From positions 86,265 through 150,264 of the forward strand of contig CDMY01000246.1 in NCBI GenBank assembly GCA_001179505.1: 64,000 nt of DNA, written 5' to 3'. The notes beneath the pieces were generated by a model that worked only from the letters and a program-made list of their open reading frames with translations, was not told the DNA's origin and did no database searches. The stretch is from Vitrella brassicaformis CCMP3155 (taxonomy: Eukaryota; Protista; Chromerida). Within the stretch, counting starts at the first letter, position 1; each line of letters begins with the position of its first letter. The translations under genes and the position numbers were made by a program. Positions 23,806 through 36,109 of this stretch are shown here, in pieces.

Positions 23806-26800
23806 TCACCTCCTCCCATGGTAGCTACCATCACGATACCCCCCATCCCTCTCCCACCCATCCCTCTGCCGATATCTCCGATCACGGTTACCGCGCAAAT
23901 CGCGGTCAGGTGTGTGGCGGCGCCTGACGTCACGGTCTTGCACGGGCTGCCGACAGGGCGGCGGGGCATAAAGCTCAATCGGCTCCTCCTGAACAACCAC
24001 AAGAGACAGACAGATGCATCCATAGAGGTGGATGGATGGCAGGCCTGATCTGTGTGTGTGTGTGTGTGTGTGTGTCTGTAGGTGATGAGTGCGACTGACC
24101 AGTCGTCGCAGCCGCTCTTCCTGGTCATCGCCTCCCCAGCTCGGGTGCTCATCAGGCCCGCCATAGTGAGAGCGGGTCTCCCGGTCCCGCGGCGCCCCTG
24201 CTGGCACATCCCTCCGGCCCCGTTCGCCCAGCTCAGGGTCGACCATGTCTCTTCCCGCTCTGCTCACGTTGGTGCGGGCCTCGTAGGTGTCCTCTGGTGG
24301 CCCGGGCTGATAGTCCTGCTGTGGATGGCGAACTTCATGCCGGCGTTCCGACGACCTGTGCGTATGTGCCGAGCGGGCCTCATTACTGCGGCGGGGAGGA
24401 GGGAGGAGGGGAGGGATTGGAGAGTAGGAGCTGGAGGGAGAGTCATCGCTGTCCTGGTTGGGGGGAGACTCGATGAGGCTGAGAGTGCGGTCGACCATGC
24501 CGAGCATGGCATTCAGCTTGTGGATTTGCTCAACAACAGCCGAGTTCTGCGGGCCCGATCTCAGGTTGCGCAACTGGTCCAATAGGAGCTCCCTGTGATA
24601 CGCTGTCTCCAGTGGCTGACTATCCTGACGCGAGTGACGAGAGAAAGACGAGCCCGCACTGTCGCGCCTGCCGAGGACAGGTGGTGGGTCAGGACGGTGG
24701 ATCGCAGGTGGGTCAAGCAGGGGGTTGGCGGGCCGCTCGCGATGGTCACTGCCACGGCTGGGGCGGGCATCACGATCGTCGTAGTAGTCACGGCTGCGCC
24801 GGTCTTGCTCGCGACGGTCCTCCACCCGACCACCTCCCATCCGATATTCGTCACCCGGCAGCTCACGGTTTCGATAACCAGCACGACGGCGATCCATCGG
24901 CTCGCGGGGCTGGTAGGGGGGGTCTCGGTCATAGCCCCTCTCCCTCACATCGTCCCGTCTGCTATTATCATGTCTGTCGTAGTCCCTCTCCCTCTCGTCT
25001 CGCCGCTCACGGTCCCGATCGCGATCGTGAGGCGACTCCCGCTGTCTCCTGCCATAGGCGCGGGTATCCTCGACTGGCCCCTGCTCCCTCCTCGCCTGCG
25101 CTCGTGTGTCCTCAGGTGGCATGTCACTCCGAGAAACGACGCTTCTCTCAGGCGACTCCCAGTCATGCCGTTGGCTGCCATGCGAGCGGAGGTAGAAGTG
25201 ATCGTGGCGGTCGTTGAGACGCCTCCCGTCTGCAGGACCTGGCTCACGGTCACGCTCGGGTGCACGTCGAGTGGCCGTCGGTCCGGTGGGTTGAGTCAGC
25301 TGGGCAGCAGCTCCCCGCTCCGCGACGACGGATACCGACTCCAGCTCATCGGTGTTGACGGCAGACGGCGGCCCCCCTTGTCCCTGAGCTGGCGGCGACG
25401 GCCCTTGGAAGGGCATCTCCGGCATCTCTCCCAAGTCTCGCACCTCGGGCATATCTCGCACCATCTGTGGCGCCGGCTCTCGCCCCACCGCGGCATTCGA
25501 GTAGACCTCCCACACATCGTCAAGAGACTCGTAGTTGGCCGTGCATGGAGCGGCGGGGCCAGCTGTGGGCTGGTCTGGCGACACACTGAGATAGCCGGCC
25601 GGAGGCGACGCCGCCATGTCGAAAGACGAAGGGGCCGGCCTGGCCTCGGCTTTCGCCTTCGGCTGTGGAGACGGTGAGGAGTCCAAGCCGCTTCCACCTG
25701 CCGCCGCAGACACACCTGCTGCACGACCCTGCTGGCCCAGGCTGTGCCGAACGATTCGCCGGGCAGCAGCCTGGTCAACGCGAATAATGAGGGGCGGGGT
25801 AGCCCGGCTGGCAGAGGGGACTGCCTTGGGTGCAGGAGAAGGGCCATTGTCTGGCGCATCCTCAGACAATACCCGTGGCGGCAGGGGAGGCCTGCTGTTG
25901 CCGGGCGGCCCACGGGGGATGGGGGGACTTGGGGTCTGCTGCTCAAGAGAGAGGCGCTGCACCCTGTCGGAGAGGCGGTCACGCTCGAAGGCTGAACAGT
26001 AGGACCCAAACAGAGGGGCGGGAGAGCGCTCGGGCAGCTCTGATGTTAATTACCCCACACCAAGGAAGGCAAGCAATCCAAACCATCACCTAGGTGTGCG
26101 GCCAGCGTACCTTCATCAGGCTCGAACGCAGACATCGCCTCATCGTCGCGGATGCACTCAGACGGCGGGGGGCGAAAAGCGTTCGGGTTGTGCCGGTAGA
26201 AGTTCCTGTAGCGCTGCTTGAGCACCTTGAGCGAGTCACCGAAGAACACCCATGGGAACGACCGGAAGGTGTGCGAGCGATCTCCCGCCGTCGGCTCCGA
26301 CGTGTCGCTGGTGGAGCGGGGGATGTTGGCATCGACTCTGTGGGGTCGTGGATGATACGCTGCGATGAATGCCGCCGATGCGCGGACCAGCATGCGCTCA
26401 TTGGCCCGCTGCCGCTCCTCATCGCTGGCACCGATGTCGCCCCCGTCGTCGAAGAGTCGTCGCTTCGTTGCGTCCACCTCGGCCCGCAAGGCATACGAGA
26501 GCTGAGATTGAAGGCAGAGGAATGGTGTGGTGGACATGCAGTGGATTGAGGTACGTATTTGTGGGAGTTTGTGGCCATCTGACCTTGCTGGAGAGATCAC
26601 GGTCCTTCTTTTGTCTGCCGTGGACGTGTGTGATGCACCCGGTGAGCAGCTGCGGACAGAGAGACAGGGCGTCAATATTGGTGTAGTGTACCTATTGTAT
26701 CATGTGTTGTGTCGTGTTGTGTGGGGTAGGTACCTCGCTCTCTTCCGCGATGCCGTACTGCTGCATGAGGTGCACCACCTGACACAGACATGACACACAG

Positions 26801-29800
26801 ACATTCACCAAGCAGAGATGATGATGGTCAGCAAGTGAGGCTCTCCATCCGTCCCGCATGCCTGCCTGCCTGCCTGCCTGGATGGATGGATGGATGCCCA
26901 CCTTTTGCCTCCATCGGTTGCATTCCATGCGCATCTCATCCACATGGTCCATGGCGTCCTTGTGCAGCACGTCGGGGTCGACCACACCCGGCGGCATCGG
27001 CTCATTCTCCGGCCAACGCCACTCATCCGCGTCCGCATCCGCATCATCCTCCTGATCGCCCTCATCACCCCCACCTCCCAAAGCATCGGTCTGTGGCCTG
27101 TCAGGGCTCTCCGTGGCGGGCGGCGGCTGCTCGACTGTCTCGAAGAAGACGTCTCGCGGCATCCGCATCTGCGCCCCATCCACATACACCATGGGGGTGT
27201 CGTCATCGTCATGCTCCTGCCGGCCACTCATCCGGGCACGAACTCGGTTCTTCATCCAGCTGACGATTGCTGCTGCAGACGGCTGGTCTCGCCGCAGCAG
27301 GTAAGTCGCTGGGCCAGCACAAGCGGCGGCTGCTGGTGGGTCAGGTATGGTTATGTCGGGTGTGGGGGTGGTGGCGTCGCGCTGCTCGGGAGGGGATGAC
27401 ATGGCCTCCGACGTGTTGTCGCTGACGTCAGCGTCACCCATCCGCCCAGCAGAGTCGTCGGGGGTGCGTTGCGACAGGCTGTTGCTACTGGGAGCGCTCG
27501 AGACGTGGGAGGGTCGTTGGGTGCGCGTGGGCGGCCGCGGTGGAGGTCGGCGGCGTGTGAGGGGTGTGGGGCGCTTGACGTAGAAGTCGGTTACTTGGTA
27601 GAGCTCGCAGAAGAAGAGGGACGCCTGGAGGCTGGTGAATCGGACGTCGTATACGTGACGCTGGTCGCTGGCCTCTGGCTGGAACGGCGTGATGGCGGGA
27701 CGCCTGATGGGCGCACACAATAGGGTGAGGTGACAGAGGGGCGGGCGCAGTGGTTGTGGGTGGATATGTCGCTTACCCTCCCAGGGATGACCGCTGGTCG
27801 GTTCTCCGTCGGTCGATGCCGCTGATGGGCGTGTGCTCCCGCGTGATGCCGTGCAGGTGCAGGTATCGCGTCAGTGTCCTCCGCAACTCGTCCTGAGATC
27901 GCAATACAGACCACAAGCGCACACGTCCCCTTCTACTCGCCGCTGTAGCGTGTTGCCCACGCACCTTGTCGAGGGAGCAGTGTTCGACGGTGACGGCGAA
28001 TGTTTTGTTGTAGAAGTGCTCCATCTGGGAGATGGCGTCGAAGAAGAAACTACGGCTGTCAGAATCTGCATAACCACACACCACACCGGGGAGGGGATCA
28101 GCACCCCTCTCTGTCATTGGCATGAATGTGTGCACACCTGTGGATGTTCGCGGGGCGCCCCGTGCGTCTGTGGGCTCCTTGACGTCGAAGGCCTGCAGGG
28201 TCTTCTCGTCGGCTGTGGCGTCCGACCTGGCTTTGAGCTCGCTCCAGCACACGTCGAAGCACGCCGCTGCCTTGACCGTCTGCGCACACACATCCACACA
28301 CACATCCATCCATCCACCCTCAGGGGTGCACTAATGGCGTCAAATTCGTTCATCCATATGTGTTTGTGTGTGTGTGTGTGTGTGTCTTGACCTGGAAAAG
28401 GATATCGAGGTAGGACTGGTTTGGCCCTGCCCGTCTGATGAGGAGGTCGACGAAGGCCAGATCCTTCGACCTGATCCACTTGACGATCAGCCGCAGCTGC
28501 TCGCACAGCCGGGCACGGTTGAAGCCATCCTCTGACATACATGACGCACACAAACCAACAAAGGGAAATCCATGGATAAAGGATAAAGGGCAGTGGGTGA
28601 GGTGCACCGCTAGGCCTACCGGGAGCCAGGGGTGTGATGCGCCTGACGCGGCCGATGTCGGGGCCGCCGACCAAGTCCTTGTCGAAGTTCTTGCTGTTCT
28701 TCTCACGCATCAGGCACGTGCCGTAGCTCTTGATCAGCGAATCCTCCTCTGCACCACACACACACACACACACACGGCCACATACAAAGGGCAGCGGTTG
28801 ACACGTGTGTCCGTCTGCGTGCGTGTTTGTGCCGACCGCCCGACTGACCAAGTGAGACACGGACAGTGGCCTTTCTGCCAGTGCTCTTCCACTTGATTTG
28901 CAGCTTCCCTCCTGGGATCCGCCTGATGAGCTCCGCAGCCACCTCGGGGCTGCTCACGGGCACCTGCGCCGACCAGCACTCCGACACATGACCCGGCGAC
29001 ACCTCCCGGGGGTACCCCCAGCACCTCTGCAAGCGACCAACCAGCCATGTGTCGGTGGGGTGTTTGTGCGGCTGCCCTGCCATCCAGCCAGCGACTGACC
29101 GTGACTTGGTGTGTGGGTATGATGTTGTCTCCGCGGTTGAGGGGCAGGTCGAGTTTGCGGCGGAATTCTTTCTCGAGAATCTCCTCCAGCACAATGGGCC
29201 CGTTGTCGACGGGGATGTGGGACACAAACAGGTGGTCGCGCTGACCTGATTGGCGAACACACAAGCATACACACACAGGGGGGCCAGAGGGTCGGGTGAG
29301 GTGGTGTGCTGTGCTTACGGTCGCATGCTTCTGCATGTCGAAACTCGTCCTCCACAGCGATCTGCAAGGGCTCGCTCGCCACCGACGTGTCGCTGAGACC
29401 CCCCTCGCGAAGCCACACCTGAAGGAAAGGCATACAAAGCCGACTGCCACCTGTCTGTTTGTGTGTGTGTGTGTGTTGGTGCGATGGATCCGCAGCTACC
29501 TGCACTTGGAACTGGACGGTCTCCATCGTCAGAGGGATGGACAGCTCCTCTCGCGCGTCGCTTCTGCGTGTGTTGTACACGAGCTCTTCGAACGGCGCGT
29601 TGCACTGGTAGAGGTTGCTGAACATGTGGCTGTTGCTGGGGTGCCGGGGGTGCTGGCCGTCGATGAGCCCCCTGATGAGGATGCGGTGCCCCACCGCCCT
29701 CTGGGCAAGCCCGAAAGGGATCCGCCAGCTCAGCAGCACACCTCTCGCCACCGGCCGCTGGGTCGCCGGGTCGCGGACCAGCCATGGCTCTGGCGCCACC

Positions 29801-32800
29801 TCTGGCCGCACCGGACGGTGGCCTGCAGTTCACACGACAGACACACAGAAATGCTGGTTGGCTGCTTGGGTCGCTGGTTGGTGTCGTGTTTGTGTGCTGA
29901 CTGACCGGCGTCACTGATGGCGTTGTCGACTGTGTCAGCGAGGTAGAGCATCTCGCGGTATATCTCGCCGCACACCGAGATGCTGGGGAAGACGCGGCCC
30001 CGCTCCCAGTGGATCGGCTCGGCCAAAAAGTCGGCGCGGTCCTTGGCCGTCCACTCGACCGGCAGCTTCACACACCGACCTGTTTTGGCGCTGTCGACGG
30101 CCTCTGCGTGCAGGGCGGCGAGGCGAAGGCAGGCGGGATCGTTGGCCTGGCGCGACAAGGACACAGAGAGACATGCACGAGGGTGCTGAGTGTGGGCGGA
30201 CCCGCCTGCCCGCCCGCCTGGTCACCTTGAGCTCGGCGTATATCTGGGGTTGGTAGACCATGTTGAGCCAGGCCACAGCTATCTTACCCAGGTTGTCGCT
30301 GCAGAAGTAATTGATGAAATACTCCTACACACACACAGTGTCACCAACACATCCATCCATCGATCCATCCACCCACCCATGCGCCCACTTGCCTTGAGCA
30401 GCCTCTGTCTCTCGGCGGGGTTCTCAAGTGGGTTGTCGTCCCGCCCCGCCGCCCTCCCCTTCGGCCGCGGCTTGTAGTACTCCGCACCAGGGGGATTGGG
30501 CGTCGGCGGAATCAGGCGTTGGTCCCATATCACGTGGTACTGGTCACCTGACAGACACAAAGAGAGACGGAGAGAGAGCGATGCATCGGTGTGTCGGTCG
30601 CGCACCATCGAGGTCTGATCCGCTGAGCTCGTTTGGGTGCGGCCGCGAGCCCTTGACGGGGAAGACTATGACGTTGACGCAGTGTCGCAGCTCAGGTCTG
30701 TCGACCGCCTCGAAGACGCGTGTGTCGCCGGGGTCGAAGCAGGGGTTCTTGGACACATTCACCCTCCCTGATGACAGACAGACAGACACAGTGGACCATT
30801 ACACAGACAGGTGCATCTGTGGGGTGTTGATTGTCCTCTCCCCCCCCTCCCCGCCCTCCACACACACACACCCCGACCGACCTGTGATGGTGTGTTCGTG
30901 TCCGTCTGGGTCCTTGACCCTCACGTGCACCTGCCCCTCCTCCAGTACTCGAGCCTCGCTCTCGTCAGACACACCATGCAGCACCGCACCTTGCTGTCTC
31001 ACACAGACAGACAGCCAGACATCACCAAGCCCACGTAGCTGGCTGGATGGCTGTGGGTGCATGGGGCTGGCTGGCTGGGTGGCTGTGTGTGTGTGTATGT
31101 TGGCGCCTTACCTCTACGTATAGGTGTGTCTTTGCGAGGATGTCCTTGACGGTGAACCGGCGGATCTCGCTGAGGCACGCGCGCAGGAAGGGCTCGTCGC
31201 TCACGTTGAACCCCTGACGCAGAAAGTCCCCCAGCAGCGCCAAGAAGAAGTGATCGCGGCCGAGGTGAGCCAGCATACGCAGCGCCGCACCTGACACATG
31301 ACACATGACACATGACACAGGGGAGGGAAGAGAATGCCAGCCATTGTGTGGCTGGGTCGGTGGGTGTGGGGTGCGCTGTCTACCGTTGTCGTCAAGCGCC
31401 TGTCGGATGTCTGTGAGCATCTCGTCTTTGAGTTGGTGGAAGACCTCTGGCTTGACGGCTCGGGTGAGGAGCAGCGTGATAACCTCCCTGTTGAGATGGA
31501 GGGGGATGAACCGCGCGTGGTCACAAGTCTCCAATTGCTGATGGGCGGAACGGTGGGACAGCACGAAAGCGAGCGTCTCCATGTGTGTGTGAGGGCGTGT
31601 GTGGTTGTGCCTACGTCATGGTGGGCTTTGAACTTCAGCTGAGACTGCCGGACCGCCATGCGGACACTGAACCACCGGGAAACAGCCCACTCAATGAAGG
31701 GACGGTGCCCCCTCACACACACACAGAGGTGTGGCTTACGGCTCTGGGTGTTTCTGCCTGAAGGAGGGGTCGAGTACGATCATGCCCTTGACACCGTTGA
31801 ACCGAATCTGACGAACACAGAACACCACACCAGGCCAAGGGGACACTTATGACGTGACGGACGATGTGCGGCAGGTAGGTACACACCTGGAAGGCGCAGG
31901 GCACATAGTCGATCTTGAGCTCCGTCGCCACCTCCTTGGCAACACTCCTGTCGCAATACCCACACCCATCTGACACAGCCAAAGCCAAGAAGTCAGGAGG
32001 GGTCATCCATCCACTCATCCACCCCGCAACGGACCGGTAAATTCGTAGTCTCCTCTGTCTGGGTCGTCTGGGTCGATGGGCGCGGTGATGTCCTTCTCGA
32101 CTACCCACTCCTCTGGCGCGATCCTGATGGCCTGGCGGGTGGCGCTGAAGCACTGACCCTGACGCGCCGCATACTTGCCTGCAGGTGGGGGTGGGTGACG
32201 CACACACACACACAGATGGGTGGGCCAGTCGTATGTGTGTGTATGTTTACGGCCAGACCAGGCATGTCGATGCTCGTGAAGTCGCCCATGAAGGACTCGA
32301 TGTAGACGAACTCCAGCTGCTCATCTGAATCAACCACACACACACACACACGACCACATCCACCCAGCTGCTCGTGTGAGTGCTGGCTACCCCACCCCCC
32401 CATCCCACCATGCTCCTACCTGGCCTGAACATCCAGCAACCGCAGTTGCGCAACTGCGATGACGAGTAGGCCAGCAACTCATACGGCGGCAGACAGGCCA
32501 GGCTGATCCCTGAAGGAGCGAGAGAGGGAGGGAGGGAGGGAGGGACAACACCAGCACCTCGGACGCCCAACGTACCCCGTGTGGACATATTTCGAGAGTC
32601 TCTACCTACCGTCATCGAGTACCTTCTTCATCCGGTGCGTGACGACTTCGTCCAGCGACGCCTCGTAGAAGAGACGGTCACAGTCCTCCTCTGCAACGAG
32701 TGACGGGCAGCAACACAGGAGAGGGCCGTGAATGTGCGGCATCAGTTGTGTCTTTCCTGTTCGCCTCTGCTGACCGACGAACGCGACGCGAAGAAAGTTG

Positions 32801-35800
32801 TCGGTCTTGTCGCGGAACCGACGCAGCACACTGACGAGAAGACACACACATAGACACAGACAGGGAGTGTCTGTGTCTGTGTGTGGATGTGGCTATGTGT
32901 TGTGTTGTGTCGTGTTGCATACCGGTTGGACTGCTCGACGAAGGGCCCCCTGACGTACATCTTGAGTGGCGTGACGTCGACGTGCAGGATGCGCATGCAG
33001 TGCTCGGGGTAGTCCATGAGGGTGTGGACCAGGCCCAGTTGCCGCTGACCACGGGCCGCGATCCTCTCAAACTCTGAGAACCCGAAACACCACACACAGA
33101 CAAAGACAAGAGAGAGAGAGATGCAATACGCGCGTTGGTCTGTTTGTGGTGGCAGCCAGCAGACCTACTACCTTGTTTCGGGTTCATGATGGGCTGGCCG
33201 ATCTTCTCCATCGCCTGGTACAACACACAGACACACTCCATCCTCCCCTCCCTCCCATTTGTGCGTTGGGCGGTGGTGTGCCGACCGTCAGACAGTAGAT
33301 TTTGACCATGGGGTCGAGCTGGGCGGCCAGCAGGCAGTCGTTCACGAACGATGGGTCAAGCTGACCACACAATGAATGGCCACAGAAGGGATCGCATCCA
33401 TCCATCCATCCATTCCCCTCTCTCTTGAACACCGACCCACCGCATTGGAGCCCTGCAGCAGCCCTGCATGTATGACGCGCACAAACACAACAAACACCAG
33501 ACAATGATTGGTACAGGAGTCGGTGCGTGACGAATTGGTGCTCACCCACCGTTTGTGACCAGCACTTGGTATGAGGCGAAGAGCAGGAAGCCGTGCTCCC
33601 CACTCGTCAGCAGCTCCATCGACACACTACAAATCATCAACACACCACACCACAAACCCAACACACGTGTGTGTGGAGACGTGGCCGCCGAGCCGTTTAC
33701 TTGTCGTCCAGGCCACCGACCGGTCAATGCCCGTGAAGATGTCGTTGACGGATGGGATCTGCAGAGGGGGTGCGTCGGGCGGGAGGTCCTCCTGCTCGGC
33801 CCGCGGCAGAAAGGTGGGCCTGTCCTGGTGCAAGTGGACGTAGCGGATGTCCTCGTACGGACACGACGCAATCCCACCAGACCTGCAGGTGGGGTGGTGA
33901 ATGAGGGAACCGTGCGTGTCGTGTCGTGTCGTGCTGTGTTGGGTGCGGTCGGTGTGGTGTGGTGTGGTCGGTGCGGTGTATATGGCCGAGCGCAACTACC
34001 CGTTGTCGCTAGTGGGCAGCAGCCCTGCCTTCATGAGCGACGGTGCGATGTTCTGCTCGAAATGGGCCTGCAGCCATCCATCAAACACACACCGCACCAA
34101 GCATGTATGGATGCGTCTGTGTGTGTGTGGGGGGGTGTCAGGCGGGGTCTTCGTCTTACGTGTCGCTTGGGACAGACCACCGTGATGCACCACGAGGCCT
34201 CCAGGGCCTGACAAACACACACATTGCTGTGTGAGTCAAGGACCACAGGACTTTCTGTCTCCTTTTGCCCTGCCCACCGTGACGTCCTTGGTGCAGGGGT
34301 GGACCGTGACGCCGTCGCCCCACTTGCCACCTTTGCCCTTGCCCTTGCCCTTGCCGGCCGCTGGGTGGGCGTCGTCGCCCCAATCGCTCCCCCACACGCC
34401 GTCGTCGGGTCGGCCGCTCGGCCGTGAGGACGACGAAGAAGACGCCCCCATGTTGCCTCGGGGCTTCTTCGGGCCGCGTGTCTGGTCGAACCCACCCTAC
34501 ACACACGAACAGAGAGACAGTACGGGGCGTGTGTGGGAGTGTGGGAGGGTCTGTATGTGTGTTGTACCGGTGGCTGGTAGCCGTCGTGTCCTGTGGTGGT
34601 GGTGGTGGATATGATCCAGGGGTCGGTCATGCGGCTGAAGTCGACCCGGTTGTTGGGGCTCTCATCGGGGCGGTCCGACTCGTCCGGGCTGAGGTGGCGG
34701 AAGCCGTCGCCGACGTCACGATAGGACAACTGCACCGATCGCACCAATGGATAGAGGGACGGACACACGCACACAAGAGGTGTGTGGTGTGGCGTGGTGC
34801 GTGTGTGCGGGGTGGTACCTACCCTGGGTGCTCTCGAGAAGAGGATGACCAGGTGGATGTCGTCATCTTGGTCGGGGGCACTGGCAGGGACCAGGAGCAC
34901 ACGCAGCTGGACATGCTTGAAGGGCCACTCGAGCCGGTAGCACCGGTAGTCCTTGCTGACCACACATACACAGGGAAGGAAGAGGATCACAGCACCATCC
35001 ATCCATCCACTCATCCGGCGAGGATGTGTGTGTGCTGTGTCTGTGTGTCTCTGTGTCTGTGTGTCTGTGTGTCATGCTCACGTGAATGTTATCCGCAGCA
35101 TCCTCTGGGTGAGGAGGAAGAGGCAGCCGACCACGCCACGCGTCAAGGCGTCACAGTCCTCCTCATAGTCGTGCTGCACTAAGAGCGAATTCTGCACGCA
35201 CACACACACACACACACACATGGACGGCCAGCTGGACGGACGGATGAATGGATGGTTGGACAGCTGGACGGTGGTGTGCTTACGGCTTTCCGCAATTGTT
35301 TCAGCTCCTTGTACGTCTCTATAAGTTTTTCCTTGACCTGCGCACACACACCACACACCAGCCCACCAACTGCCCCCCTGCTACGACACACGCCCGCAGG
35401 TACTCAGTTGTCACTCAGTCACTGACCATGTTGCCGAAGTACAGCCGCGTGCCGAAGAGCGCCGTGGTCCGGTGGGAAGGCTTGGATGCGTCCAGGTCGA
35501 CCGACAGCATGGCCTGCAGCGGGCCCTCACGCTGGTGGGTCTCCTGGCAGGCGTGCTCTGCCCTGTCACGGCTGTAATACCGGATGACCGCCACGCCATC
35601 GCCCGACATCCAGATCCTGGCAGGCACCAAAAAAGCGTTCCAACTTCCCCTCCCTCTCTGCTCTGCGTGTGTGCGTGTGTGCGTGTGTGCGTGTGCGTCA
35701 TCCAAGAGAGTACTCACTCATCGACGAGTCCATGGTTCTCATAGGTCTGCCGCAACTCCCATGCCGTCGTCCGTGGGTTCAGCCCTTTGACCACCAACGT

Positions 35801-36109
35801 GCCGGAAGACTGCTCGAGGCCCTGCACACGTCAACAGGCAGCCAAGGGGCAGACAGAATATGGATGGAAATTGCCCTTCTCTCAGATCACAAATCAGTGT
35901 CGGTGTGCTCACCCACCTCATGCTCCTTGCGCCAGCTCGTCTGACAGGCTCTGCATGGGCCGCCCTTGACCAGAAACACAGATCCTGCATGACACAGAGA
36001 CGTCATGGTCCATGGCGCGCACACACACACACAGACGGGCATGAGGAGCATCCCATCCCGTAGGTGAGATCTCACCGTCGATGTCGGCGTACTCATGGTC
36101 CGCTGCCAT
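23806..36109 (-). CDS. RDR: Eukaryotic RNA-dependent RNA polymerase (RDR1/2/6-like, DLDGD) with large insertions and an Arg/Asp-rich tail
   Basis: ~35 exons. N-terminal RRM (TLVVKGLNP...), VTPLKMYVRGPFVEQSNRVLR...DNFLRVAF, YELLAYSSSQLR, MGDF...GKYAARQGQCFS, SDGCG, AFQVRFNGVKG, LNREVITLL, KNPCFDPGD, catalytic ELSGSDLDGDQYHVIWD (split by an intron at ~30548-30605), SDNLGKIA, LAALHAEAVDSAKTG, LMQQYGIAEESELLTG, RSFPW. Start MAADHEYADID at 36109; stop at 23806. Confidence 0.92.

What the first reader, a model, noticed from the sequence alone, without database searches (positions are those of the whole stretch)
26990..29825. Large FN3-like + RRM-like insertion inside the conserved C-terminal region of the RdRP
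GEIYREML (near 29950) and DPDVLHKDAMDHV...LMQQYGIAEESELLTG (near 26980-26630) are, from recalled alignment, only tens of residues apart in plant RDR1. Here they are separated by several hundred codons over ~9 exons, mostly phase-checked. The insert contains an FN3-like pattern (LLSWRIP...VGHRILIR...QFQVQVWL...SEP), an RRM-like pattern (LFVSHIP...AQVPVSSPEVAAELIRRIPGGKLQIKWK), a further globular-looking ~200 aa and a Pro/acidic linker. I do not recall such an RDR architecture. Inference: an extra RNA-binding or partner module for template selection.
Basis: partly seen in the sequence, partly recalled or inferred. Interest (0 to 1): 0.75.

Follow-up and report, generated by a model that had tools for sequence, protein, structure and literature searches.

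The report
Four-domain insert inside algal RNA polymerase
An RNA-copying enzyme (cellular RdRP) of the alga Vitrella brassicaformis really carries an expressed, in-frame block of about 700 extra residues between its catalytic part and its C-terminal head. The block is predicted to fold as one fibronectin-III-like domain plus three RRM-like domains and was found only in this alga's three RdRP genes.

Summary
The minus-strand gene at window 36109-23809 is Vitrella brassicaformis CEL96798.1 (2754 aa).

- **Gene structure:** ten GT-AG exons (29822-26902) continue the frame after the last RdRP motif, GEIYREM. They return to a tail that profile comparison identifies as the canonical RdRP head domain (hhalign 98.9 %, E 1e-17).
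- **Size of the insert:** the 119 nearest RdRPs have a median of 158 residues after that motif. Here about 712 residues lie between the motif and the head.
- **Expression:** spliced contigs from two studies join the RdRP exon, every insert exon and the head exons with exactly the predicted lengths. The insert is therefore neither a nested gene nor spliced out in those assemblies.
- **Predicted folds (AlphaFold2):** one FN3 sandwich (Z 10.7) and one RRM fold (Z 9.0). Pfam finds none of these by sequence.
- **Distribution:** an exhaustive phmmer search of 1.84 billion proteins found the FN3 part only in the three Vitrella RdRP paralogues. All three have the order core, insert, head.

The function is inferred, not shown: an RNA- or partner-holding arm at the neck-head hinge. 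I class it as a new variant of a known enzyme, of moderate interest.

The parts
23809..36109 (-). Whole RdRP gene (CEL96798.1 / A0A0G4EIH3, 2754 aa): N-terminal RRM_1, RdRP core, insert, head, long disordered tail.
   Evidence: tblastn of P0001 on the window. Pfam RdRP at residues 557-1139, E 2e-146, and RRM_1 at 43-98. Record names.
29906..30146 (-). Exon A: the last exon of the RdRP Pfam domain, ending at GEIYREM (neck helix 3 region). It ends in intron phase 1.
   Evidence: Pfam RdRP profile positions 510-581 of 582. Aligns to RDR2 residues 905-964 and to 7w84 residues 902-964. Neck 3 assignment from PMC8713982.
29319..29822 (-). Exons B and C (29822-29500, 29418-29319): FN3-fold module, P0001 residues about 1155-1292, flanked by phase-1 introns.
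   Evidence: AlphaFold2 model m5f4c610af1a1 residues 2-137. VIA-align Z 10.7 to Robo3 FN1 and Z 10.3 to titin Fn3-56; the top 28 rows are all FN3. Foldseek E 6e-4, TM by target 0.6-0.7. 40-50 % identical among paralogues.
28849..29245 (-). Exons D and E (29245-29100, 29026-28849): RRM-fold unit a, P0001 1296-1404, flanked by phase-1 introns.
   Evidence: Model residues 145-256 show beta-alpha-beta-beta-alpha-beta-beta. Z 9.0 to a nucleolin RRM and Z 8.7 to U2AF65 RRM1, with 83 of 83 residues aligned. pI 8.7-9.4.
28138..28748 (-). Exons F, G and H (28748-28620, 28531-28392, 28279-28138): a helix plus RRM-fold unit b, P0001 about 1405-1540.
   Evidence: Low-confidence model m3de0dbe35fa5. Foldseek top hits are tandem-RRM structures aligned over about 235 columns.
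27550..28065 (-). Exons I, J and the start of K (28065-27965, 27892-27777, 27703-27550): RRM-fold unit c, P0001 about 1556-1664.
   Evidence: Z 9.7 to U2AF65 RRM1 (77 residues aligned, rmsd 2.1); nearly all of the top 50 are RRMs. An aromatic residue on strands 1 and 3 is kept in all three paralogues.
26992..27549 (-). Middle of exon K: Pro/Ser-rich linker (27549-27313), a short conserved islet (27312-27124, P0001 1744-1806) and an acidic linker (27123-26992).
   Evidence: Composition. The islet is 41 % identical to P0002 and is also present downstream of P0005.
26111..26991 (-). RdRP head domain after the insert: end of exon K (26991-26902), exon L (26778-26734), exon M (26649-26584) and exon N (26501-26111).
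   Evidence: hhalign of the Vitrella tail alignment A4 against 23 RdRP head regions A5: probability 98.9 %, E 1.1e-17, 144 columns. Weak collinear hits to RDR2 996-1031 and 1088-1114.
23809..26039 (-). C-terminal tail of about 700 residues, rich in Arg, Pro, Asp and Ser. It is reached by splicing out 26110-26040, which removes the stop at 26046.
   Evidence: The X4 and X6 contigs join 26111 to 26039. Frame checked, composition.

Best explanation
This is a genuine, expressed, lineage-specific domain insertion in a cellular (RDR-type) RNA-dependent RNA polymerase. After the last core motif (GEIYREM, in or near neck helix 3) the chain leaves the polymerase body. It runs through one FN3-type beta sandwich, three RRM-type modules, a Pro/Ser-rich linker, a short conserved islet and an acidic linker, and then returns to form the normal helical head domain. 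The entry point corresponds to the flexible, unmodelled neck 3-head connection of Arabidopsis RDR2, a surface site that can accept extra domains without disturbing the catalytic barrels. The insert predates the triplication of the gene in Vitrella and has been kept folded and in frame in all three copies. My inferred mechanism is that the basic RRM-fold units form an RNA-holding arm beside the template cleft, capturing or guiding single-stranded template or holding product, and that the FN3 module acts as a spacer or protein-docking unit. Shown: the insertion, its expression, its position, its conservation and its predicted folds. Inferred: RNA binding and any role in template selection.
For: - Exon model with continuous phase, identical to the public protein P0001.
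- Spliced contigs from two studies cover exon A through the head.
- RdRP Pfam E 2e-146, ending at residue 1139.
- The tail is a true head domain by hhalign, 98.9 %, E 1e-17.
- The 119 nearest RdRPs have a median of 158 residues after the motif, and in the long-tailed fungal ones I inspected the head motif follows the core motif directly.
- FN3 fold Z 10.7 and RRM folds Z 8.7-9.7.
- All three paralogues have the order core, insert, head.
- Identity among paralogues is 40-50 % for the FN3 module and 24-37 % for the RRM units, against about 20 % in the Pro/Ser-rich linker.
- Units a, b and c have pI 8.6-9.4 in P0001 and P0002.
- Neck 3 leads through a flexible loop to the head, whose tip faces the cleft (PMC8713982).
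Against: - No Pfam fn3 or RRM match on any insert part, even at E <= 10.
- Models come from only three sequences; mean pLDDT is 64 and 53.
- Z values of 8.7-9.7 are only slightly above the tool's stated background of 7-8.
- The RNP1 and RNP2 aromatic positions are only partly kept and differ between paralogues.
- Units b and c of the third paralogue are not basic.
- No RNA-binding, activity or interaction data exist.
- Contigs cannot exclude a minor isoform that skips the insert.
Confidence: 0.55

Rival explanations
1. The insert is a protein-docking platform rather than an RNA binder. Degenerate 'pseudo-RRM' units and the FN3 module would recruit partners such as Dicer, Argonaute or a helicase, or mediate oligomerisation of the polymerase.
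For: The RNP aromatic positions are not canonical and are not conserved across paralogues. There is no RRM_1 profile match. FN3 domains are typically protein-protein modules (established knowledge).
Against: Three basic RRM-fold units in a row resemble tandem-RRM RNA binders in Foldseek. The position next to the template cleft fits RNA handling. No partner is known.
Confidence: 0.28
2. The insert is a tolerated lineage-specific expansion at a permissive surface loop with no specific function, as is common for large insertions in alveolate proteins.
For: It was found only in Vitrella. It enters at a flexible loop. Part of it consists of low-complexity linkers.
Against: The folded modules have been retained in frame in three paralogues that have diverged to 24-50 % identity, whereas the linkers have drifted to about 20 %. 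The short islet at 1744-1806 is also conserved.
Confidence: 0.12
3. The insert is real, but the FN3/RRM assignment is wrong for some or all units, especially b and c, because the shallow-alignment models default to common folds.
For: pLDDT is 53 for the b/c model, with many residues below 50. Foldseek gave no match at E <= 0.001 for that model. There is no sequence-profile support.
Against: The secondary-structure order is beta-alpha-beta-beta-alpha-beta in each unit. Both search methods list almost only FN3 domains or RRMs respectively.
Confidence: 0.15
4. The finding is an artefact: the insert exons belong to a nested or separate gene, or are normally spliced out, and the long protein is a gene-model error.
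For: The public annotation of this genome does contain errors: the third paralogue is split into two models, and one intron of this gene is drawn differently from the RNA contigs.
Against: One 5150-nt spliced contig runs from exon A through all insert exons to the head and tail. A second study's contig joins exons E to K. All piece lengths fit an open frame. The same arrangement occurs in two other loci.
Confidence: 0.03

Closest known systems
Plant RDR1/RDR2/RDR6-type cellular RdRPs (Arabidopsis RDR2, PDB 7eu0/7roz; 7w84)
   Same: N-terminal RRM, RdRP core (PF05183) with the DLDGD loop, neck helix 3 motif GxxYR, and a helical head domain with the QYG..E.EL.TG and FPW motifs. Core identity is 35-38 %.
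   Different: In RDR2 about 30 residues link GKLYR to the head; here there are about 712 residues with four predicted domains. The protein also carries a disordered C-terminal tail of about 700 residues. Total length is 2754 aa against about 1120 aa.
Neurospora QDE-1 and Mucoromycota RdRPs
   Same: Two-barrel core followed by neck and head. Some Mortierella-type proteins also have long regions after the core.
   Different: In the long-tailed fungal proteins inspected (P0019, P0042, P0053, P0112) the head motif follows GxxYR within about 40-50 residues, so the extra length is C-terminal and not an insertion at this site. One other long-tailed protein, P0050, has a low-complexity stretch there instead.
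Tandem-RRM RNA-binding proteins (IMP3 RRM12, nucleolin RBD12, PABP RRM1-2, hnRNP A1 UP1)
   Same: Predicted units b and c superpose as a pair of RRM folds, and units a and c match single RRMs at Z 9.0-9.7.
   Different: There is no sequence-profile match, the RNP1/RNP2 motifs are degenerate, and the units sit inside a polymerase rather than in a free RNA-binding protein.
Trans-acting RDR cofactors with RRM-like folds (for example the plant SGS3 XS domain working with RDR6)
   Same: Functional analogy only, from my own knowledge: an RRM-like RNA-holding module working beside an RdRP.
   Different: Here the modules are covalently built into the polymerase. No XS-domain match was seen among the top structural hits.

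Membership tests
Eukaryotic cellular RdRP (RDR family, PF05183) | Full-length match to the RdRP profile | tested here: met
   P0001 residues 557-1139 match profile positions 1-581 of 582, E 2.1e-146. Window exons also match individually.
Eukaryotic cellular RdRP (RDR family, PF05183) | Catalytic DxDGD loop in the second barrel | tested here: met
   The DLDGD string is present near residue 988 of P0001. Its equivalence to the RDR2 metal A site was read by eye.
Eukaryotic cellular RdRP (RDR family, PF05183) | C-terminal helical head domain (PF26253 RdRP_head) | tested here: met
   hhalign A4 against A5: 98.9 %, E 1.1e-17. The precomputed PF26253 hit lies on the gene model downstream of the third paralogue. 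The local Pfam copy appears to lack PF26253: it did not report it for plant RDR2 P0045, which carries it in the precomputed list, so its blank result is uninformative.
Eukaryotic cellular RdRP (RDR family, PF05183) | RNA-templated RNA synthesis | not testable with these tools
   Needs an enzyme assay.
Fibronectin type III (PF00041) | Match to the fn3 sequence profile | tested here: not met
   No Pfam family at E <= 10 for P0001:1150-1300 or for the window ORF pieces.
Fibronectin type III (PF00041) | Seven-strand FN3 sandwich fold | tested here: met
   Predicted model only: Z 10.7, rmsd 2.8 over 97 residues to Robo3 FN1. The top 28 VIA rows are all FN3, and Foldseek probability is 1.00. Strand pLDDT is 70-84.
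RNA recognition motif (PF00076) | Match to the RRM_1 sequence profile | tested here: not met
   No RRM family at E <= 10 for 1296-1410 or 1400-1665. hhalign of units a, b and c against the protein's own N-terminal RRM gave a best P of 0.022, not significant.
RNA recognition motif (PF00076) | Beta-alpha-beta-beta-alpha-beta fold | tested here: met
   Predicted models only: unit a Z 9.0/8.7, unit c Z 9.7, and units b+c against tandem RRMs at Foldseek E 1e-3. Confidence is modest to low.
RNA recognition motif (PF00076) | RNP2 and RNP1 aromatic residues on strands 1 and 3 | tested here: inconclusive
   Read by eye from the paralogue alignment. Unit a has an RNP2-like LFVSHI stretch and a W/Y on strand 3 in two of three paralogues. 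Unit c keeps one aromatic on each strand in all three. Unit b does not.
RNA recognition motif (PF00076) | RNA binding | not testable with these tools
   Needs a binding assay.

The most novel reading that the evidence does not exclude
Vitrella RdRPs carry their own template-recruitment arm: an FN3 module plus three RRM-fold modules hinged between neck and head. This arm would take over in cis the job that separate cofactors do for other RdRPs (SGS3 with RDR6, Pol IV coupling for RDR2, RDRC subunits in fission yeast). It would be the first folded multi-domain insertion described inside the C-terminal architecture of a cellular RdRP.
Probability: 0.3. Interest if true: 0.65.

Novelty: new variant of a known kind. 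Interest (0 to 1): 0.5.

Why it matters
How cellular RdRPs choose and hold their templates is poorly understood, and the role of the head domain is still unclear even in RDR2 (PMC8713982). A natural polymerase that has four extra folded modules spliced in exactly at the neck-head hinge shows that this site tolerates large insertions. It also offers a self-contained system for asking whether RNA-binding modules next to the cleft change template choice. In addition, it documents RNA-silencing machinery with unusual architecture in a chromerid alga, a close photosynthetic relative of apicomplexan parasites. The public gene models there need correction: one paralogue is split in two.

Tried and rejected
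- **Pfam:** the ten window ORF pieces and the insert parts of P0001 gave nothing beyond RdRP. This rejects sequence-level membership of fn3 or RRM_1.
- **PDB sequence searches:** single tail exons gave no hit or noise. The joined tail of P0001 and its two-sequence profile hit RDR2 only weakly (E about 1). Profile-profile comparison resolved this.
- **Word-based homologue search:** the third paralogue's insert returned only itself and missed even the known paralogues. It says little about absence.
- **ESM Atlas:** the feature search scored 0.79, to a ciliate FN3 protein, which is a lead only. The shape search gave FN3/Ig hits only and no FN3+RRM combination. One earlier Atlas call failed on length.
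- **Internal duplication:** hhalign found no significant similarity among units a, b, c and the N-terminal RRM, so I rejected recent tandem duplication.
- **P0004:** this 639-aa ENA protein with phage minor-capsid families matched my query at E 1.8e-5 in 9 stretches. I judged it spurious or repeat-driven, since my query contained 27 intron-encoded residues.
- **Literature:** searches for Vitrella or Chromera with RdRP, Argonaute or Dicer found nothing relevant.
- **Nested gene or exon skipping:** rejected on the spliced contigs.
- **Operators' rule on spliced models:** I sent no joined model of my own to any tool. The spliced protein used is the public record returned. only translated exon by exon.
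Full report
**1. What is in the sequence**

The region is GC-rich eukaryotic DNA with many short introns. On the minus strand, exon A (30146-29906) encodes the end of the Pfam RdRP domain (profile positions 510-581 of 582) and closes with GEIYREM followed by a few more residues. It stops in intron phase 1.

I traced ten further exons, B to K, between 29822 and 26902. Every one has AG/GT borders, and the phases hand over without a stop. The exon count is 10, not about 9.

**2. Is it one mRNA?**

The run search returned six holders of the stretch, of unrecorded library type. When laid on 25800-31700, two of them proved to be spliced assemblies.

- **X4 record 9** (5150 nt) lies on 30134-29905, 29821-29498, 29026-28849, 27702-26905, 26501-26111 and 26039-25800.
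  - The unlisted record stretches between these pieces are 244, 629 and 114 nt.
  - Allowing for one to three ambiguous border bases, these equal exons C+D (100+146), exons F to J (129+140+142+101+116) and K-end+L+M (3+45+66).
- **X6 record 23**, from a different study, joins exon E to exon K with the same arithmetic.

The two in-frame 72-nt introns (H/I and I/J) are removed in both contigs. The insert exons are therefore part of the same transcript as the RdRP core and the head. They are not a nested gene and are not skipped in these assemblies. Contigs cannot exclude a rare skipping isoform.

**3. Identity of the gene**

An exhaustive phmmer search with exons B+C, given as one stop-free window reference, ran against 1.84 billion representative proteins. 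It returned four proteins.

- **P0001** (99 % identical, 2754 aa) is CEL96798.1 / A0A0G4EIH3 of Vitrella brassicaformis CCMP3155. It maps to window 36109-23809. Its residues 1155-1880 are identical to my exon translations.
- **P0002** (CEM03318.1, 2625 aa) and **P0003/P0005** (CEL96779.1, 1669 aa) are the two other Vitrella RdRPs.
- **P0004** is a phage-like repeat protein that I regard as spurious.

Pfam on P0001 finds RRM_1 at 43-98 and RdRP at 557-1139, and nothing else. From this point I used the public protein by reference. I sent no joined model of my own to any tool.

**4. Is it an insertion into a conserved region?**

Exon A aligns to Arabidopsis RDR2 residues 905-964 and to the 7w84 RdRP at 902-964. 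Single tail exons were too short to hit the PDB. The tail of P0001 hit only RDR2, weakly but collinearly, at 996-1031 and 1088-1114.

To settle the question I aligned the regions after GxxYR of 23 diverse RdRPs from plants, fungi, an amoebozoan, a sponge and green algae (A5). I compared this with the Vitrella tail alignment (A4). hhalign gave 98.9 % probability, E 1.1e-17, over 144 columns. The match starts at the D.D.L motif that follows GxxYR by about 20 residues in the Eutrema RDR2 used as reference.

Among the 119 nearest non-Vitrella RdRPs, the length after the motif has a median of 158 residues, and 92 of them fall in 150-199. A few fungal proteins have 300-636 residues there. In four long-tailed ones I inspected (P0019, P0042, P0053, P0112), the head motif follows within about 40-50 residues, so their extra length is C-terminal.

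In P0001 the motif ends at 1140 and the head begins near 1852. About 690 residues have therefore been inserted.

According to the RDR2 structure paper, position 962 lies in neck helix 3. That helix connects through a flexible, partly unmodelled loop to the C-terminal head, and the tip of the head faces the template cleft (PMC8713982). The insertion sits in that connection.

**5. What the insert is made of**

I folded two pieces of P0001, each with an alignment of the three paralogues.

*Residues 1150-1410* (mean pLDDT 64, strands 70-84):
- A beta sandwich at model residues 19-116. Its structural neighbours are FN3 domains. VIA-align gave Z 10.7 to Robo3 FN1 (97 residues, rmsd 2.8) and Z 10.3 to titin Fn3-56, and the first 28 rows are all FN3. 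Foldseek gave E 6e-4, probability 1.00 and TM by target 0.6-0.7.
- A beta-alpha-beta-beta-alpha-beta-beta unit at model residues 151-254. It matches a nucleolin RRM (Z 9.0) and U2AF65 RRM1 (Z 8.7, 83 of 83 residues).

*Residues 1400-1665* (mean pLDDT 53), a poor model, but both search methods point the same way:
- VIA-align lists almost only RRMs for model residues 161-266 (U2AF65 RRM1 Z 9.7, rmsd 2.1).
- Foldseek lists tandem-RRM structures (IMP3 RRM12, nucleolin RBD12, PABP RRM1-2, UP1, PUF60, Sxl) aligned over about 235 columns.

My reading of the insert, in order:

| Module | P0001 residues |
|---|---|
| FN3 fold | 1155-1292 |
| RRM-fold a | 1296-1404 |
| RRM-fold b | about 1430-1535 |
| RRM-fold c | about 1556-1664 |
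| Pro/Ser-rich linker | 1665-1743 |
| Conserved islet | 1744-1806 |
| Acidic linker | 1807-1850 |

Caveats:
- The Z values for the RRM units are only a little above the tool's stated background.
- The alignment is three sequences deep.
- Pfam matches no insert part at E <= 10.
- The units show no detectable similarity to each other or to the N-terminal RRM.
- The RNP aromatic positions are only partly retained.
- Units a to c are basic (pI 8.6-9.4) in P0001 and P0002, but less so in the third paralogue.

**6. Conservation and distribution**

All three Vitrella RdRPs carry the block directly after the core motif. The third paralogue seemed to lack the head. However, the gene model immediately downstream on the same strand carries PF26253 RdRP_head. 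In addition, tblastn places the islet, the acidic linker and the start of the head at L001 20084-20590, overlapping the annotated end of CEL96779.1 and running just past it. That gene has been split by the annotation.

Identity of P0001 to its paralogues:

| Region | Identity |
|---|---|
| RdRP core | 59-64 % |
| FN3 | 40-50 % |
| RRM-fold units | 24-37 % |
| Head | 46 % (P0002 only) |
| Pro/Ser-rich linker | about 20 % |

The folded modules are thus kept while the linker drifts.

Outside Vitrella nothing was found. The exhaustive phmmer search found no other carrier of the FN3 part. The closest RdRP cores are plant and fungal at 35-38 % identity, with no alveolate among the top 120. The word search and the Atlas searches added nothing. 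No paper in the library deals with these proteins.

**7. How it most likely works**

*Shown:* a folded, expressed, conserved block of about 690 residues enters at the neck 3-head hinge of an otherwise canonical RdRP. The protein keeps the DLDGD string and the head.

*Inferred:* the head tip is thought to guide template RNA into the cleft, and the inserted units resemble basic tandem RRMs. I therefore think the block is an RNA-holding arm beside the template entrance, with FN3 as a spacer or docking module (about 0.4-0.55).

*Rivals:*
- A protein-docking platform of pseudo-RRMs (about 0.28).
- A tolerated, functionless expansion (about 0.12).
- A mistaken fold assignment for some units (about 0.15; this overlaps with the others).
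- An annotation or splicing artefact (about 0.03).

**8. Verdict**

The functional inference remains untested.

The enzyme is a member of the RDR family, and all testable defining features are met. The inserted modules are FN3-like and RRM-like by fold only; they are not demonstrable members of those sequence families. I class the finding as a new variant of a known kind, with interest 0.5.

I confirmed both independently.

Noticed in passing
window 26040-26110 (minus strand): The spliced contigs of X4 and X6 join 26111 to 26039. The public protein CEL96798.1 uses a shorter intron and keeps 17 extra residues (ELPERSPAPLFGSYCS). Both versions stay in frame, and the stop at 26046 is intronic in either.
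   Followed up: partly
window 23809-26039 (minus strand): The RdRP continues into a tail of about 700 residues rich in Arg, Pro, Asp and Ser, with runs of RD/RE dipeptides (P0001 about 2380-2470). The tail aligns to P0002 at 31 % identity. Its function is unknown and it resembles RS/RD-type disordered regions.
   Followed up: partly
L001 10001-23550 (GCA_001179505.1, CDMY01000246.1): The third Vitrella RdRP is annotated as two adjacent same-strand genes: CEL96779.1, and a 955-aa model with RdRP_head. The islet, the acidic linker and the start of the head bridge the gap, so this is probably one gene.
   Followed up: yes
window 28164-28360, 30331-30527, 30725-31118: Contig word depth is about 5- to 100-fold or more above the flanks in all four runs, with many false joints and loose ends there. 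These are dispersed repeats inside introns. GGATGGATGG-type and CA-rich motifs recur in many introns of this window.
   Followed up: no
window 29906/29822, 29319/29245, 28849/28748: The FN3 module (exons B+C) and RRM-fold unit a (exons D+E) are each bounded by phase-1 introns, which is the symmetric pattern expected of shuffled modules. The FN3 start and the FN3/RRM-a border are at about the same protein positions in the third paralogue.
   Followed up: partly
window about 35824-35400 (minus strand), P0001 residues 43-98: There is an N-terminal RRM_1 domain just above the Pfam threshold (20.9 bits against a cut-off of 20.7), as in plant RDRs. It shows no significant similarity to the three RRM-fold units of the insert.
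   Followed up: partly
P0004 (ENA, 639 aa): This protein carries phage minor-capsid and YmgM families and matched the FN3 query at E 1.8e-5 in nine short stretches. The match is probably repeat- or composition-driven, since my query included 27 intron-encoded residues.
   Followed up: no
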